IMG/VR virus record: IMGVR_UViG_3300045971_000577
Span: 248,001 to 312,000 of that record
Strand: one strand, 5' to 3'
DNA length: 64,000 nt
Under the pieces are notes generated by a model. The model saw only the letters and a list, made by a program, of their open reading frames with translations. It had not been told where the DNA came from and searched no databases. A program made the translations under genes and the position numbers. Of this stretch, positions 7,570 to 15,545 are shown one piece after another (position 1 is the first letter of the stretch; each line of letters begins with the position of its first letter).

Positions 7570-7644
7570 TGGTGCGTCTGGAGGGAATCGAACCCTCGTC
7601 ATAGGATTTAGAATCCCGTACTCTAACCGCTGAGCTACAAACGC
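7570..7644 (-). tRNA. Amber suppressor tRNA (anticodon CTA)
   Basis: GCGTTTG/CAGACGC acceptor, ACCA; anticodon arm CGGGA-TTCTAAA-TCCTA; anticodon at 7609-7611. Confidence 0.85.
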
Positions 7645-9969: not shown

Positions 9970-10554
9970 TTAGGTGCTACCCTGTGTAGCATTACTATTT
10001 ATATTTTTACAAAATCGTTCATGCCTTTTTATGTTACAAAATATTATGTTCTTCTTACCGCACCTAACGCATTCTATATATTTGGTGGGGCGAGATCTAT
10101 TAGAACATGCCTTAGAACAATAATATTCGTTGTATTGTCTTTTATCTCCTTTTGTAAAAATCTTAGAGAATGATACGCCGCAATAGCAGGTATACCTATT
10201 TGTTACTCTTTCTATTCGGCGCCCTAACAAAGATCTCTTAGCGATATGCGCTGCGGATTGTTTATACCCCGAAGTTCCTTCGCCACCGTCTGTTTTATTT
10301 CGGAGAATACCTGTACCAATATCTATTCGACCATACCACTGAATCATTCTGCGTTCAATCGCGAATGCACCTAACTCGGTGAGATTATTTTCTAATATCA
10401 ATATTAATGATTTATCCGGCGGTTGTATATGCTCGGTGCGGCTCTTTAGGTAAGCCCTGTTTCCCGAACCTTTACCGATATAATACGGTGTTCCGGCCTT
10501 TGCCGTTCGTGAATCTACTTTTCGTAAATACGCATAAACATAAAATGTTGTCAT
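9970..10554 (-). CDS. GIY-YIG-like homing endonuclease
   Basis: FYVYAYLR...TPYYIGKG; NKTDGGEG. Confidence 0.85.
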
Positions 10555-10670: not shown

Positions 10671-10699
10671 AATATAAACGATCACAAACCGATTGTCAA
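10671..10699 (-). promoter_or_regulatory. Sigma70-type promoter
   Basis: TTGACA-N17-TATATT. Confidence 0.55.
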
Positions 10700-11706
10700 C
10701 CGTTTCTAATAGGAACAAGATTATCTCTAAATATTGCCCAACATTCTTCCCATGTCCATTTACTAGATGATGCCTTTACTACGTCTCGGTTTAGTTTCGA
10801 TGCGGCTAATATTGCGGTGTCTAAATCTTCCGACATGACTCCGTTCACTCCTTGATCGATAATATCTATCGGCCCGGGTACCGGATAACCTGCGACAGGA
10901 GTACCAATGCTCAGTGCCTCAATGATAACAATGCCAAAGGTATCCGTCTTACTCGGAAATGCAAATACATCTGCCCTAGCATAGCTATTTGCAAGCTCTG
11001 TCCCGGATTGATATCCAAGGAACTTGACATTCTTATATTTCGACTTTAATTCTTCAAGGTGTGGTCCGCCACCTACTATTTCGACATTGTATTTGTCCTG
11101 TAACACGCAAAGTGCTTCTAAGTTTTTTTCCTTCGAAACACGACCTACATATAATACAATAGGTGTCAATCCAATGTATGCAGATCGATGAGTAATAGTC
11201 GGTGCAAGAGTAGTTCTATCCACACCACGTGTCCAGGAATATATTTCACCTACAAACCCGTGTTCCTTTAGTTCTTTTACCATTGTCTCGGTTGTTGTAA
11301 GCACTTTTCCACTGTGTCTATGAAACCATCTCACATACATGTATGTGAGATTTTCCGGAATACCATACATAGTTTTTAGAAATTCAGGAAACTTTGTGTG
11401 GTACGAGGTATTATATCTTAGATTATGCCAACCACAATATAATTGTGCTGCCAGGCCTAGTGGACCCTCGGTAGCAATATGTATATGATCTGGATTTTCT
11501 TTCTTGATATATTTTGCAATGAATGGCCAGGATATCTTTACTTCAGGATACCCCGGACAAGAAAAATGTGGTAGCAAAGACGGATTAATACATGCTATAT
11601 CATATCCTTCTCGCTTGGCTAGAATCTCAATATTAGTAAAGGTAGTTACGACACCATTTACTTGATTTGGCAAGTTATCTGTTATTATCAATATCTTTTT
11701 TGTCAT
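10696..11706 (-). CDS. GT4-family glycosyltransferase (Agt-like candidate)
   Basis: PNQVNGVVTT, HIATEGPLG, YVGRVSKEKN, DTFGIVIIEA motifs. Confidence 0.9.
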   Translation of the reverse strand: MTKKILIITDNLPNQVNGVVTTFTNIEILAKREGYDIACINPSLLPHFSCPGYPEVKISWPFIAKYIKKENPDHIHIATEGPLGLAAQLYCGWHNLRYNTSYHTKFPEFLKTMYGIPENLTYMYVRWFHRHSGKVLTTTETMVKELKEHGFVGEIYSWTRGVDRTTLAPTITHRSAYIGLTPIVLYVGRVSKEKNLEALCVLQDKYNVEIVGGGPHLEELKSKYKNVKFLGYQSGTELANSYARADVFAFPSKTDTFGIVIIEALSIGTPVAGYPVPGPIDIIDQGVNGVMSEDLDTAILAASKLNRDVVKASSSKWTWEECWAIFRDNLVPIRNG

Positions 11707-12457
11707 ATATGTTACTTTCTTTCCAATGTATTAGTTCCCAGGAACCGTCGTGATGTTCGACCAATGCTGTTAGTGATTCTACCCAGTCTCCGTCATTCAT
11801 ATATATTATTCCATCTATGTCTTTTATTTCAGCATGATGAATATGGCCACATATAACTCCGTCAAATCCTCTTTTCTTGCAATAGTCTGCAATAGTCTTT
11901 TCAAATTTGAATATAAAATCTACGGACTTCTTAACTTTTATTTTCAGATATTTAGAGAGCGACCAATATCCAAATCCGAATTTATGTCTAATCCAGTTAA
12001 ATTTTGTATTCAATGACAGGATTAGATCGTATGCTCTATCACCTAAGAGGCTTAGCCACGGGGCAAGTCGAGTTATACCATCGAATAGATCTCCGTGGAC
12101 CACTAAGTAGTGTTTTCCGTCTAGCCCGATGTGTTCGGTTTGATTTTGAAATTCGATAGACCCGATGCTTATATGATAATTTAGCAAAGGGCGAATAAAC
12201 TCATCATGATTTCCAATTACATAAATTACTCTTGTCCCATGTTTTGCACATTTCAGCACTCGCCTAACAACATCGGAATGGCTTTGTTTCCATTTTAGTC
12301 TATTTTGTTGAATTTTCCAACCATCAATAATATCACCTACGAGATACAATGTCTCTGCTGTATTTGCCTTTAGAAAATTAGTCAGTTGCGATGCCTTACA
12401 TTCCTTAGATCCGAGATGAACATCGGAAATAAAAATAGATCGGTATTTCTTGATCAT
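11675..12457 (-). CDS. Metallophosphoesterase of the LpxH/YbbF (PlcP-like) family
   Basis: FISDVHLG, GDIIDGW, GNHDE, HGD, CGHIHH, NDGDWVES. Confidence 0.88.
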   Translation of the reverse strand: MIKKYRSIFISDVHLGSKECKASQLTNFLKANTAETLYLVGDIIDGWKIQQNRLKWKQSHSDVVRRVLKCAKHGTRVIYVIGNHDEFIRPLLNYHISIGSIEFQNQTEHIGLDGKHYLVVHGDLFDGITRLAPWLSLLGDRAYDLILSLNTKFNWIRHKFGFGYWSLSKYLKIKVKKSVDFIFKFEKTIADYCKKRGFDGVICGHIHHAEIKDIDGIIYMNDGDWVESLTALVEHHDGSWELIHWKESNIYDKKDIDNNR

Positions 12458-12556
12458 ATATTCCTTTAAGTGTCAGCATATTTATCGCAAGTATAAATGA
12501 TCATTATTGCAGCATTATTACACTCTCTACGTATTTCGATAAATATATGAAAAGGG

Positions 12557-12952
12557 ATGTGTATGAAGAAACTATGGCTTATCTTAGTTATATTTGCCGC
12601 GGGATGCGCTTCGTTACCTGCGGATTTCGATAACAACGAATATGCAATAGCAAATCGAATCTTTACGTTGGCCGAAGTTTACAAGGTCGGTTGTTCCGAT
12701 CCCGAAAAGACAAAGTTGAATTTCACTGAGCTGTCAACACTATCGCTCGAGTTGGTAAACTACAGTGCAGATATTCCTAACAATCAGGATACAGTGAAGC
12801 TAATTGCACCAATGCACAAGATGATTTCCGATGCGAGCGTAAAGTTCAACACAGAAACCCATACCGCAACATATTGCAAACTGAAGTTAGACAATATTGA
12901 ACTTGCGGCAGGTATTATCAAACATGCTATCGCTCAGAGGAGAATGAAATGA
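12557..12952 (+). CDS. Putative lipoprotein
   Basis: Hydrophobic leader ending in lipobox-like FAAGC; GATAAATA upstream. Confidence 0.7.
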   Translation: MCMKKLWLILVIFAAGCASLPADFDNNEYAIANRIFTLAEVYKVGCSDPEKTKLNFTELSTLSLELVNYSADIPNNQDTVKLIAPMHKMISDASVKFNTETHTATYCKLKLDNIELAAGIIKHAIAQRRMK

Positions 12953-13203
12953 GTTTTCAAACTAACCTAAACGAACTGTTTGCATCCGGTAACCCATATG
13001 CGGTGGCAATAGCAGAGAAGATAAAGAATATCGACGATGCGTATGCTAATAAACTCATCACTGCGGATGAAGCTAAAGACCTTCTCAACGATATGAAAAC
13101 GGAAGAAGCATTAGTTGATCTTGCCAACAATTTGCAAATAAAACTCTATGTTCAGCAAACAATCGATAAGTTGATATTTCTTGTCGAGAATGTGATTTTT
13201 TAG
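12949..13203 (+). CDS. Hypothetical protein coupled to the lipoprotein
   Basis: ATGA overlap. Confidence 0.7.
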   Translation: MSFQTNLNELFASGNPYAVAIAEKIKNIDDAYANKLITADEAKDLLNDMKTEEALVDLANNLQIKLYVQQTIDKLIFLVENVIF

Positions 13204-13208
13204 TCATA

Positions 13209-13234
13209 AGAATAGGAACCGAAGTTCCTATTCT
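13209..13234. terminator. Hairpin terminator between convergent units
   Basis: Perfect 11-bp stem with a UUCG loop on the minus strand. Confidence 0.75.
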
Positions 13235-13500
13235 GGATTTTCTGTTGCCAGGCATTCCTGCCCCGTGGTTTACCGCTTTTTAGGCAGCAAGAGCCTCAGT
13301 GTAAAACGAATCATTTGCGTTTACTTTTTGTTTTCTTCGATTTACGGTCGTTGCTCACCGAGCGATAAGAAGCCTACTCAATACCCAGGCGATTCCGGAT
13401 CGGGCCCATAACTAAAACTTCACAAAAGGCTTAGTGGTGGACCCGGGGGGATTCGAACCCCCTTGTTGAATGTCTTTCTGTTTCCTACTTTACGCTGTTA
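13235..13500 (-). ncRNA. ssrA: Circularly permuted (two-piece) tmRNA
   Basis: Acceptor piece (T-arm, CGGGTCC-ACCA ending 13435) lies upstream of the 5' end GGGCCCG (13407); tag ANDSFYTEALAA* at 13280-13318; G3:U70; outer ends approximate. Confidence 0.85.
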
Positions 13501-13620
13501 TTTTCCTTAATTCTGATTCATAATAGTGTAGCAGACCTACAATAGTCATACGATCAAATCTGTTACCGTATCCTAAATGCCGTCTGTAGTAATCAATCTG
13601 TGATTCAATAAATGATTTAC

Positions 13621-14046
13621 TCATGATAGCTTCTGACTCTTTACGATACGTCTAAGTTCGAGTTCTGTGTCTCGCTTCTTTTCCGTAGCTCGTTTGTCGT
13701 ACTCTTTCTTACCCTTTGCAAGTCCAATCGAGAGTTTGTATTTACCTCTCGTTGAATAAATCTTCAACGGCACAAGAGTTAGTCCACGTTCCTTTGTCTT
13801 ACCGATGAGACGTTGGATTTCTTTCTTATGCAAAAGCAACTTACGCGAACGGGTCATATCGTGCTCGGAGCCACCGATGTTAGCGCCCACAAGCATGATG
13901 TTACCATCCATAACTACGCAGTGAGTTCCGGCGATTGAACAGCTCTTAGCCGCAATCGCCTTTACTTCCCAGCCTTCCAGCTTCATTCCACACTCGTATT
14001 GCTCGAGTATTTCATAATCAAAGAAGGCCTTCTGATTTGAAATCAT
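13621..14046 (-). CDS. smpB: SsrA-binding protein
   Basis: [52 protein letters not shown]. Confidence 0.95.
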
Positions 14047-14810
14047 AATTTCTCTTTACAGTTATCAAAATGCCATCTATTCATCGATTCTTTACAGTTA
14101 TCAAAATGCCATCTATTCATCGATCCTTCACCGCCCGACCGTTGGCAGTGCGGGCACTCAACAGTATTTCTTTTTTTACCAAGCCTTGACAATCCGATGT
14201 TAATATTATGTTCTGCCGAATTAGGTTTACCTTTTGCTGCTAAACTCATTTTTTCACGAGTCTCTTGGCTTACTACCTTATTTCGCATTTTCTGTTTTGT
14301 TTCTTCGGACATATTTTGTTTGGCTATGCTCATCTTATATCTCGCATCATCTGACATTGTTTTGCCGATGTTAGCCTCGCGCATTTTCTGTTTTGTTTCT
14401 TCTGTCCGAATTTTACCTGTATTTTTATCACTTATTCTTTGACGAACTTCTTTGGGCATAGATTTACTAGCTAATCCGATAATTTTCCGGGTTGCTGCAG
14501 AATGACTATGACCGGATGCTCCTTCGCCGCCATCGGTTCTGTTTTCTAAAATCCCTGTGCCTAAATCTTTTCGACCATACCACCGAATCATTCTGCGTTC
14601 GATTGCAAATGCACCGAGCTCAGTTAGATTACATTCTAAAATTACAATACGTGATATATCTACAGGAGTGTGTACTCCTGTATTATTCTTTTTATTCCTA
14701 TGATCAACATAAGCTCGATCTCCTGTGCCTTTTCCGATATAGTACGGTGTGCCAACATTAGCGGTTGCCGAGTTACGTGATCTTAAATAGGCATATACAT
14801 AATAATTCAT
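14043..14810 (-). CDS. GIY-YIG-like homing endonuclease with NUMOD3 repeats
   Basis: YYVYAYLR...PYYIGKG; repeated S.ET(K/R).KM. Confidence 0.88.
14053..14124. repeat. Exact 36-bp tandem duplication
   Basis: [12 protein letters not shown] encoded twice. Confidence 0.9.
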
Positions 14811-14876: not shown

Positions 14877-15545
14877 TTACCACATAAGGTCAAAGAAACC
14901 GCGTAACACCTTGTTAACGCTTCCTGTCTTTCCGCTGTTGTGATCCTTTACAACATCGTCTTGAAAACGGTATGTTTGTATCTTATCCCCGCGCATGCCA
15001 GAACCAACCTGTTCTTTGCGGCTTGAATCTAGCGCGAACTTGTGCTCTCTATGTGCGTGTGCGTTTAGTGCCTCTAGCAGGGCTTGCTTCGCCTGATCTT
15101 GGCTATTTTGCCTGGATCGACACTGTGCCGTGGCAGTTTGGCCTGTAGGCAAATACGTTATACGACACGAATTTTGATGTTTGTTGCGGTGTTGGCCGCC
15201 TGCGCCAGTACCGCTGTACCATTCTATTCTAAAATCCGAGTCTTTGAATTCGATATTACGCAATTCGGGATCAGTGATCGCAACTGTTACGGTGCTGGTA
15301 TGAACTCTGCCCTTGCGCTCGGTTGGTGGAATACGCTGTATGCGGTGCCCACCTGCTTCTTTCTCTAACTGTGATAAGTCTGCACCCTCAACTTCTATGA
15401 AAAGTTCTCCGGGGAGATTCCTTATCACGCGATTGATTCAGCCAACTCTGTCAAAGTGGCGTTGGTATGCTGCTGCAAGATCTACAGTGAATAGCTTGCT
15501 GTCTTCTCCGCCCTCAGCTGCGCGTATTTCAATAATTCTTTTCAC
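14877..15545 (-). CDS. prfA: RF1-type class I release factor interrupted by an in-frame TGA (15438-15440)
   Basis: GGAGA RBS + GTG; IIEIRAAEGGEDSKLF, HRIQRIPPTERKGRVHTS (PxT), GAGGQH (GGQ), IQTYRF. Confidence 0.85.

What the first reader, a model, noticed from the sequence alone, without database searches (positions are those of the whole stretch)
10696..12457. PlcP-like phosphoesterase plus GT4 glycosyltransferase: phospholipid-to-glycolipid remodelling pair
Seen in sequence: overlapping genes with all metallophosphoesterase motifs and GT4 motifs. Established: PlcP phospholipase C with the Agt glycosyltransferase replaces phospholipids by glycolipids under phosphate limitation in Rhizobiales and SAR11. 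Inference: the phage may mine host membrane phosphate for DNA synthesis or alter the envelope. An LpxH-like lipid A role is the alternative.
Basis: partly seen in the sequence, partly recalled or inferred. Interest (0 to 1): 0.6.

Follow-up and report, generated by a model that had tools for sequence, protein, structure and literature searches.

The report
Phage-borne PlcP–Agt lipid-remodelling gene pair
A 369-kb pond phage carries two overlapping genes that match the bacterial enzymes which swap phosphorus-containing membrane lipids for sugar lipids, and the same pair recurs in hundreds of viral contigs whose copies are usually labelled as a lipid A gene (LpxH).

Summary
On the minus strand, a 260-aa metallophosphoesterase (11675-12457) overlaps a 336-aa GT4 glycosyltransferase (10696-11706) by 32 nt.

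The phosphoesterase belongs to the PlcP family, not to LpxH:
- It is 54% identical to the P. aeruginosa PA3219-type PlcP and 50% to the S. meliloti one, but only 23% over 120 aa to E. coli LpxH.
- It scores far below both NCBIfam LpxH cut-offs.
- An ML tree splits LpxH from the PlcP family at 100/99 support.

The GT4 carries the published Agt-clade signatures (GRVSKEKN, FPSKTDTFG, a His103/Asp255 dyad). It is 37% identical over its full length to P. aeruginosa Agt1.

The host genome is a complete jumbo myophage with terminal repeats, 47 tRNAs, a tmRNA and SmpB. IMG/VR holds at least 479 viral contigs with relatives. Of 79 informative loci among the best 80, 71 have a glycosyltransferase directly downstream and 76 have one within about 2 kb. 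Both genes are under strong purifying selection (dN/dS about 0.04).

Most likely the pair converts host phospholipids through diacylglycerol into glycolipids during infection. Phosphate mining is a plausible purpose but is inferred: I found no Pho box, pstS or phosphatase here. I found no paper describing a phage PlcP.

The parts
11675..12457 (-). PlcP-family metallophosphoesterase (phospholipase C type), 260 aa
   Evidence: Pfam Metallophos 1.2e-11. It is 54% identical over 240 aa to the P. aeruginosa PA3219-type PlcP and 50% to the S. meliloti PlcP-type protein, but 23% over 120 aa to E. coli LpxH. It falls below both LpxH equivalog cut-offs. The ML tree splits LpxH from PlcP at 100/99. The AlphaFold model (pLDDT 78.8) has an LpxH-like core plus a two-helix insertion at residues 133-196, and the best PDB matches are LpxH at 18-23% identity.
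10696..11706 (-). Agt-type GT4 diacylglycerol glycosyltransferase, 336 aa
   Evidence: Pfam Glycos_transf_1 1.4e-22 and Glyco_transf_4 2.6e-14. It is 37% identical over 334 aa to the P. aeruginosa Agt1-type protein, E 3e-78. Agt-clade motifs are present: GRVSKEKN at 188-195, FPSKTDTFG at 250-258, H103, D255, E263 and W319 (against PMC8231724). The model has a GT-B fold at pLDDT 91.9, with retaining GT4 enzymes (BshA, MshA, PimA/B) as the best structural matches.
11675..11706 (-). 32-nt overlap between the end of the phosphoesterase gene and the start of the GT4 gene (operon-type coupling)
   Evidence: ORF coordinates. Relatives overlap in the same way: L039 by 41 nt, L004 by 50 nt and P. aeruginosa plcP-agt1 by 4 nt.
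12458..12556 (-). Upstream intergenic region shared with a divergent lipoprotein-like gene; contains the AAGGA ribosome-binding site at 12462-12466
   Evidence: Sequence read. No convincing sigma-70 promoter and no Pho box within 3 mismatches was found here.

Best explanation
The two genes form a phage-carried copy of the bacterial PlcP-Agt membrane-lipid renovation pathway. The phosphoesterase is a Mn-type metallophosphoesterase of the PlcP family. It would cleave host glycerophospholipids (PE, PG, PC) into diacylglycerol plus a soluble phospho-head group. The overlapping GT4 enzyme is of the Agt type. It would transfer glucose or glucuronate from host UDP-sugars to that diacylglycerol, making monoglycosyl or glucuronosyl diacylglycerol.

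The net effect in an infected cell is that membrane phospholipid is replaced by phosphorus-free glycolipid. The bilayer stays intact and diacylglycerol does not build up.

Shown here: family membership by sequence, signature residues, fold, synteny and phylogeny; strong purifying selection; and wide conservation of the phosphoesterase-glycosyltransferase pairing in phages.

Inferred: the enzyme activities themselves, and the purpose. The purpose I favour is release of lipid phosphorus for synthesis of a very large (369 kb) genome in phosphorus-poor fresh water, with host phosphatases finishing the release of phosphate.
For: Identity to characterised proteins:
- 54% to the P. aeruginosa PA3219-type PlcP and 37% to the adjacent Agt1-type protein.
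- 50% to the S. meliloti PlcP-type protein.
- The two reference proteins are 47% identical to each other. PMC8528852 reports 46% for PA3219 against S. meliloti PlcP, which supports their identification.

Not LpxH.

Agt-clade motifs and the His/Asp dyad from PMC8231724 are present.

The same gene order occurs in 19 of 32 bacterial loci, from Sphingomonadales, other Alphaproteobacteria and Holophagaceae. This matches the 'type 2' plcP-agt arrangement of PMC4796936.

In phages:
- 479 IMG/VR contigs encode relatives.
- Of the best 80 loci, 41 have the GT4 and 30 have a GT2/GT21-like enzyme directly downstream. Five more have a glycosyltransferase within about 2 kb, and a fatty-acid desaturase lies nearby in several.
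- The surrounding genes differ between loci, so the pair moves as a unit.

dN/dS is about 0.04 for both genes, and metal ligands are invariant in 80 of 80.

Other phage lineages carry the phosphoesterase in phosphorus- or metabolism-related islands. In pelagimyophage Mosig it sits next to a phosphate ABC transporter gene. In cyanophage S-SRM01 it sits near psbA.

Rough arithmetic from my own knowledge: one genome copy needs about 0.74 million phosphorus atoms. An E. coli-sized cell holds about 2x10^7 phospholipids, so lipid phosphorus could cover tens of genome copies.
Against: No activity, lipid or expression data exist. The only runs that hold this DNA are DNA runs from pond metagenomes.

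This genome has no pstS, alkaline phosphatase, UDP-sugar synthesis gene or desaturase. PhoH is the only other phosphate-associated gene found.

No Pho box lies upstream.

The host is unknown. The beta-type permuted tmRNA is only a hint.

Sequences of the best-studied PlcP and Agt (SAR11 HTCC7211, Phaeobacter MED193) were not on hand. Residue correspondence to GTcp therefore rests on motifs and numbering, not on a direct alignment.

In 30 of 39 phage GT4 homologues the dyad Asp is Glu. That change cut GTcp activity by more than 90%, so specificity may differ across the phage clade. The window's copy has Asp.
Confidence: 0.7

Rival explanations
1. The same enzymes and chemistry apply, but the purpose is to change envelope properties rather than to supply phosphorus. 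Replacing phospholipids with glycolipids could block superinfecting phages, alter receptor or porin function, stabilise the membrane through a long latent period, or tune lysis timing.
For: Lipid renovation changes the membrane proteome and is argued to affect phage receptors (PMC9804370). This genome carries no other phosphorus-acquisition gene apart from phoH. A fatty-acid desaturase sits near the module in several relatives, which suggests general control of membrane properties.
Against: Nothing direct. The association with phosphate genes in Mosig and the very large genome favour a nutritional role. The two purposes are not mutually exclusive.
Confidence: 0.2
2. The phosphoesterase is an LpxH-type UDP-2,3-diacylglucosamine pyrophosphatase that acts in lipid A synthesis or modification, as database annotations state. 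The GT4 would then be an LPS glycosyltransferase.
For: Automatic names on homologues say LpxH. The only solved structures that match are LpxH. Virome surveys list 'lpxH' as an LPS auxiliary gene.
Against: It scores 47.4 and 40.5 bits against LpxH equivalog cut-offs of 134 and 190. It is 23% identical to E. coli LpxH against 50-54% to PlcPs. The tree split is 100/99. Photobacterium has a true LpxH plus this family as a separate paralogue. The partner gene carries Agt signatures, not LPS-core GT signatures.
Confidence: 0.03
3. The pair acts on a non-lipid or non-diacylglycerol substrate. For example, the phosphoesterase could trim a phosphodiester-linked surface polymer or nucleotide-sugar, and the GT4 could glycosylate a different acceptor such as a polyprenol-linked glycan or a protein.
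For: GT4 is a very broad family. In 30 of 80 relatives the partner is a small GT2 whose best family match is an arsenosugar-type GT, below its cut-off. The Asp-to-Glu change in many phage GT4s hints at altered chemistry.
Against: The window's GT4 keeps the residues at the positions reported as diacylglycerol-binding and catalytic in GTcp (H103, T159, R160, W319, D255). It is 37-43% identical to plcP-linked bacterial Agt homologues, whereas Agt-clade members share under 25% with other GT4s.
Confidence: 0.07

Closest known systems
PlcP-Agt lipid renovation pathway of bacteria (P. aeruginosa PA3219/PA3218, S. meliloti PlcP, SAR11 HTCC7211 PlcP/GTcp, Phaeobacter MED193, B. cenocepacia plcP-agt-dagK, Methylosinus OB3b)
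   Same: The two protein families, gene order and overlap are the same. Identity is 50-54% for PlcP and 37% for Agt1. All metal ligands and Agt signature motifs are present.
   Different: This copy is encoded by a virus, not a cell. No Pho box or dagK was found. The phage copies form their own clade (98/99 support). They are 71-87% identical to each other, and at most 58% identical to any clearly bacterial copy found (the 72-76% matches filed under MAGs there look like, or are untested for, phage DNA).
LpxH (UDP-2,3-diacylglucosamine pyrophosphatase of lipid A synthesis)
   Same: Same metallophosphoesterase superfamily and overall fold, including a helical insertion over the active site. LpxH chains are the best PDB matches.
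   Different: Only 18-23% identical, below the equivalog cut-offs, a separate clade, and a separate paralogue in a genome that has both. The partner gene is a lipid glycosyltransferase, not a lipid A gene.
Phosphate-stress auxiliary genes of marine phages (pstS, phoA, phoH)
   Same: Host-derived metabolic genes carried by large myophages that could ease phosphorus limitation during infection. In phage Mosig the PlcP-like gene lies beside a phosphate ABC transporter gene.
   Different: These act on uptake or scavenging of external phosphorus. This module would recycle the cell's own membrane phosphorus. This genome has phoH but no pstS or phoA.
'UDP-2,3-diacylglucosamine hydrolase/diphosphatase' genes annotated in Pelagibacter phage Mosig and Synechococcus phage S-SRM01
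   Same: Same protein family (49% and 38% identity). Both are isolated phages.
   Different: Those phages carry the phosphoesterase without an adjacent glycosyltransferase. They branch apart from the jumbo-phage clade, which suggests separate acquisitions.

Membership tests
PlcP (LpxH-like metallophosphoesterase phospholipase C) | Calcineurin-like metallophosphoesterase with a complete set of metal-ligand motifs | tested here: met
   D12/H14, D42/D45, N83/H84/D85, H121 and H205/H207 are present. They are invariant across 22 diverse family members and 80 viral homologues.
PlcP (LpxH-like metallophosphoesterase phospholipase C) | Closer to experimentally characterised PlcPs than to LpxH | tested here: met
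   54% to the P. aeruginosa PA3219-type protein and 50% to the S. meliloti type, against 23% over 120 aa to E. coli LpxH. The ML tree places it inside the PlcP family, split from LpxH at 100/99.
PlcP (LpxH-like metallophosphoesterase phospholipase C) | Operon-type linkage to a diacylglycerol-using lipid glycosyltransferase (agt or pgt type) | tested here: met
   32-nt overlap with an Agt-type GT4. The same order occurs in 19 bacterial loci and in 71 of 79 informative viral loci.
PlcP (LpxH-like metallophosphoesterase phospholipase C) | Mn-dependent hydrolysis of PE, PG or PC to diacylglycerol | not testable with these tools
   Needs enzyme assay or lipidomics.
PlcP (LpxH-like metallophosphoesterase phospholipase C) | Phosphate-stress (PhoB / Pho box) control | tested here: inconclusive
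   No match to CTGTCATNNNNCTGTCAT within 3 mismatches near the genes. The same pattern also failed on the P. aeruginosa reference locus, so the test is weak. The host is unknown.
Agt (GT4 diacylglycerol glucosyl/glucuronosyl transferase clade) | GT-B fold, retaining GT4 family | tested here: met
   Pfam GT4 and GT1 domains. Model pLDDT is 91.9 with two Rossmann-like halves. Best matches are BshA, MshA and PimA/B, with TM-score up to 0.78.
Agt (GT4 diacylglycerol glucosyl/glucuronosyl transferase clade) | Clade signatures GRVAXEKN and FPSXTDTFG with a His-Asp catalytic dyad (Asp in place of the usual GT4 Glu) | tested here: met
   GRVSKEKN at 188-195, FPSKTDTFG at 250-258, H103 and D255, against the features listed in PMC8231724. 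Correspondence is by motif and numbering. The GTcp sequence itself was not on hand.
Agt (GT4 diacylglycerol glucosyl/glucuronosyl transferase clade) | Full-length similarity to a characterised Agt, well above the <25% seen with other GT4s | tested here: met
   37% over 334 aa to the P. aeruginosa Agt1-type protein, E 3e-78. 38-43% to plcP-linked alphaproteobacterial homologues.
Agt (GT4 diacylglycerol glucosyl/glucuronosyl transferase clade) | Formation of MGDG or GADG from diacylglycerol and UDP-sugar | not testable with these tools
   Needs heterologous expression with lipidomics.
LpxH | Scores above the curated equivalog cut-offs (NF003743, TIGR01854) | tested here: not met
   47.4 against 134 bits and 40.5 against 190.35 bits.
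LpxH | Groups with bona fide LpxH in phylogeny | tested here: not met
   Separated from E. coli and Photobacterium LpxH by a 100/99 branch. Photobacterium carries both paralogues.

The most novel reading that the evidence does not exclude
A large clade of jumbo phages (at least 479 IMG/VR contigs; this copy is from a pond) drives conversion of the host's membrane phospholipids into glycolipids during infection. This would free lipid phosphorus for replication of very large genomes. The phages use interchangeable glycosyltransferase partners (GT4 Agt-type or a small GT2), sometimes with a desaturase. If so, a widespread viral 'lpxH / LPS biosynthesis' auxiliary gene is really a lipid-renovation module, and viruses contribute to glycolipid pools and phosphorus cycling in phosphorus-limited waters.
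Probability: 0.4. Interest if true: 0.75.

Novelty: new member of a known kind. Interest (0 to 1): 0.6.

Why it matters
PlcP-Agt lipid renovation is a major bacterial response to phosphorus scarcity. In the literature I could search it is treated as a purely cellular trait.

If phages carry and use it, three things follow:
- Infection itself could trigger phospholipid-to-glycolipid replacement, whatever the host's own phosphate sensing reports.
- The 'lpxH / LPS biosynthesis' entries in virome auxiliary-gene tables may need re-reading as lipid-renovation genes. Those entries were not checked here.
- Membrane lipid would join external phosphate as a phosphorus source that phages exploit.

The idea is directly testable, because both enzymes give clear gain-of-function lipid phenotypes in E. 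coli.

Tried and rejected
Searches and analyses that gave nothing:
- Megablast of the region against deposited phage genomes found no match.
- The Pho-box pattern search found nothing near the genes. It also found nothing on the P. aeruginosa reference locus, so it is uninformative.
- The sigma-70 and terminator scan gave counts no different from shuffled sequence.
- The mixture-model 'careful' tree on 63 rows did not finish in two attempts. One row in it (L010) was mis-trimmed by my script and gave an artefactual long branch. I replaced it with a finished careful LG+G4 tree on 32 rows.
- Papers PMC6052262 (PlcP manganese and key residues) and PMC2806695 (S. meliloti PlcP) are not held.

Ideas considered and set aside:
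- The 72-74% identical homologues in a 'Haliscomenobacter' MAG might have pointed to a Bacteroidota host. Their neighbours (a DnaE fragment, and DUF4337 as in a 359-kb phage contig) indicate mis-binned phage DNA.
- The divergent lipoprotein-like gene might have been part of the module. It is conserved only in the nearest relative.
- TAG recoding, suggested by the tRNA with anticodon CTA, is not supported.

Tools not used:
- Read laying, because only DNA runs kept as contigs hold the region.
- Complex prediction, because I do not claim the two proteins bind each other.
- The large representative search, because the family scans and word search settled the identity.

Full report
**What is there**

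The finding's coordinates bound two minus-strand ORFs exactly. One is a 260-aa ORF at 11675-12457 and the other a 336-aa ORF at 10696-11706. They overlap by 32 nt.

The first ORF has an AAGGA ribosome-binding site 4 nt before its ATG. Pfam assigns it to the calcineurin-like metallophosphoesterases (1.2e-11). Pfam assigns the second to GT4/GT1 glycosyltransferases (1.4e-22, 2.6e-14). Every metallophosphoesterase metal-ligand motif is present.

**The genome**

The window is bases 248001-312000 of a single 369,145-bp contig. Its ends overlap. It is held as an IMG/VR virus record with direct terminal repeats and a CheckV completeness of 100%.

The window also encodes a major head protein, a tail sheath and tail fibres. 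It carries 33 tRNAs, a permuted tmRNA, SmpB and a truncated RF1-like protein. This is a jumbo myophage. The only sequencing runs that hold this DNA are pond metagenomes.

**PlcP or LpxH?**

NCBIfam's two LpxH equivalog models score 47.4 and 40.5 bits against cut-offs of 134 and 190. LpxH chains are the only solved structures that match by sequence, and only weakly (E about 2e-5). E. coli LpxH aligns at 23% over 120 residues.

A tblastn search of the plasmid collection turned up two useful references:
- **P. aeruginosa.** One replicon carries an 'LpxH-like' gene that overlaps a glycosyltransferase and is followed by an adenylate cyclase gene. This is the arrangement described for PA3219 (PlcP) and PA3218 (Agt1), both validated experimentally in PMC8528852.
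- **S. meliloti.** A 3.7-Mb replicon carries the single PlcP-type gene.

The window's protein is 54% identical to the P. aeruginosa protein and 50% to the S. meliloti one. The two references are 47% identical to each other. The paper reports 46% for PA3219 against S. meliloti PlcP, which supports my identification of the references.

A Photobacterium genome contains both a true LpxH (344 bits) and, elsewhere, a member of the window's family (37.5 bits). The two are therefore distinct paralogues.

A finished maximum-likelihood tree (32 rows, LG+G4) separates E. coli LpxH, Photobacterium LpxH and a Bacteroidota LpxH-like protein from everything else at 100/99. It places the window in a phage clade (98/99) inside the family that holds both reference PlcPs.

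The AlphaFold model (pLDDT 78.8) shows a confident phosphoesterase core and a less confident two-helix insertion at residues 133-196. This is the position of the lipid-binding lid in LpxH, which is the best structural match at 18-23% identity.

**Is the GT4 an Agt?**

PMC8231724 defines the Agt clade by these features:
- the motifs GRVAXEKN and FPSXTDTFG;
- a His104-Asp256 dyad, with Asp replacing the usual GT4 Glu;
- diacylglycerol-contact residues His104, Thr162, Arg163 and Trp320;
- less than 25% identity to other GT4 enzymes.

The window's protein has GRVSKEKN (188-195), FPSKTDTFG (250-258), H103, T159-R160, D255, E263 and W319. It is 37% identical over 334 residues to the P. aeruginosa Agt1-type protein. 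It is 38-43% identical to the glycosyltransferases that follow plcP-like genes in Alphaproteobacteria. Its model (pLDDT 91.9) is a GT-B fold, closest to retaining GT4 enzymes.

**Synteny and distribution**

Among 32 bacterial loci recovered with the phosphoesterase, 19 have the GT4 homologue directly downstream. These come from Sphingomonadales, other Alphaproteobacteria and Holophagaceae. This is the 'type 2' plcP-agt neighbourhood of PMC4796936.

The closest relatives (71-87% identical) are not bacterial:
- A 12-kb and a 98.6-kb contig are syntenic with the window, sharing SmpB or RF, the pair, and a zinc-ribbon protein.
- A 359-kb contig looks like another jumbo phage.

IMG/VR yields 479 viral contigs with relatives. 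In the best 80 loci:
- 41 have the GT4 directly downstream;
- 30 have instead a roughly 236-aa GT2/GT21-like glycosyltransferase;
- 5 more have a glycosyltransferase within about 2 kb;
- several have a fatty-acid desaturase close by.

The flanking genes differ between loci, so the pair behaves as a portable cassette.

Both genes are under strong purifying selection against the nearest relative (dN 0.07, dS 1.6-1.8). Metal ligands are invariant in all 80 viral copies.

Two isolated phages carry the phosphoesterase alone and branch separately in the tree. In Pelagibacter phage Mosig it lies next to a phosphate ABC transporter gene. In Synechococcus phage S-SRM01 it lies in an island with psbA.

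**How it most likely works**

By homology, the phosphoesterase cleaves host glycerophospholipids into diacylglycerol and a phospho-head group. The Agt-type enzyme then glycosylates the diacylglycerol using host UDP-sugars. Membrane area is kept while phosphorus is released.

The constant pairing with some glycosyltransferase, whichever family, fits a need to consume diacylglycerol.

The purpose is inferred. Phosphorus supply is attractive for a 369-kb genome, which needs about 0.74 million phosphorus atoms per copy. From my own knowledge, an E. coli-sized cell holds roughly 2x10^7 phospholipids. The Mosig context points the same way.

Against this, the genome has no pstS, alkaline phosphatase, UDP-sugar genes or desaturase, only phoH. 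No Pho box was found, although that test also failed on the positive control locus. Changing envelope properties, for example to exclude other phages, is a live alternative.

**Novelty**

The pathway is well known in bacteria. In the searchable literature I found no description of a phage-encoded PlcP or PlcP-Agt pair. Deposited phage copies and virome surveys label such genes LpxH or LPS biosynthesis.

I therefore rate this a new member of a known kind in a new (viral) setting, with moderate to high interest. It is widespread, probably mis-annotated, and easy to test.

**Limits**

There are no activity or expression data, and the host is unknown. The beta-type tmRNA is only a hint.

The word-based searches reached their candidate caps. 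I make no claim from absence, and the figure of 479 contigs is a lower bound tied to six peptide patterns.

Noticed in passing
window 7570-7644 (-): tRNA with anticodon CTA, which reads the TAG stop codon (ARAGORN calls it tRNA-Pyl). Genome-wide there is no sign of TAG recoding: TAG ends 70 of 377 long ORFs, and reading through any one stop codon raises ORF coverage (0.71 to 0.81-0.86; TAG gives the smallest gain).
   Followed up: partly
window 13189-13535 (-), 13621-14046 (-), 14877-15428 (-): A translation-rescue cluster. It holds a permuted tmRNA (tag ANDSFYTEALAA; Rfam beta_tmRNA 87.7 bits and tmRNA_permuted 89.6 bits), SmpB (Pfam 5e-46) and a truncated 183-aa RF1-like protein with the PCRF end plus the RF-1 domain. 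The beta-type tmRNA hints at a betaproteobacterial host.
   Followed up: partly
window 1-29100 (-); whole genome: There are 33 tRNA genes in the window and 47 in the 369-kb genome, almost all on the minus strand in one long array interspersed with small ORFs.
   Followed up: no
window 9970-10554 (-) and 14043-14810 (-): Two ORFs with very similar N-termini. The second contains a NUMOD3 motif, so both look like homing-endonuclease-type genes. They flank the region that holds the lipid module and the tmRNA/SmpB genes. The nearest relative L039 keeps only a short remnant of the first.
   Followed up: no
window 12557-12952 (+): A 131-aa ORF with a lipoprotein-type signal and lipobox (…FAAGC), transcribed divergently from the phosphoesterase gene. 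No family match was found. It is conserved only in the nearest relative (69% identity), so it is not part of the module.
   Followed up: partly
L050:411-1121 (-) and 30 of the IMG/VR loci L054-L133: In many related phages the phosphoesterase is followed by a roughly 236-aa GT2/GT21-like glycosyltransferase instead of the GT4. Its best NCBIfam match is the arsenosugar-type GT TIGR04283 (67.8 bits, below cut-off). A fatty-acid desaturase is nearby in several loci.
   Followed up: partly
L004 and L050 (contigs C110 and C31 of a MAG labelled Haliscomenobacter sp.): Both contigs carry 72-74% identical copies of the phage phosphoesterase next to a DNA polymerase III alpha fragment. L004 also has a DUF4337 gene like the one in the 359-kb phage contig L036. 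They look like phage DNA binned into a bacterial MAG.
   Followed up: partly
39 phage GT4 homologues in loci L054-L133: The catalytic-dyad position (D255 in the window) is Glu in 30 and Asp in 9 of the phage homologues. [quoted passage not shown]
   Followed up: no
window 10671-10699 (-): A near-consensus sigma-70-like promoter (TTGACA, 17 nt, TATATT; 11 of 12 matches) overlaps the stop codon of the GT4 gene, upstream of the homing-endonuclease-like ORF. The overall count of such sites is no higher than in shuffled sequence.
   Followed up: no
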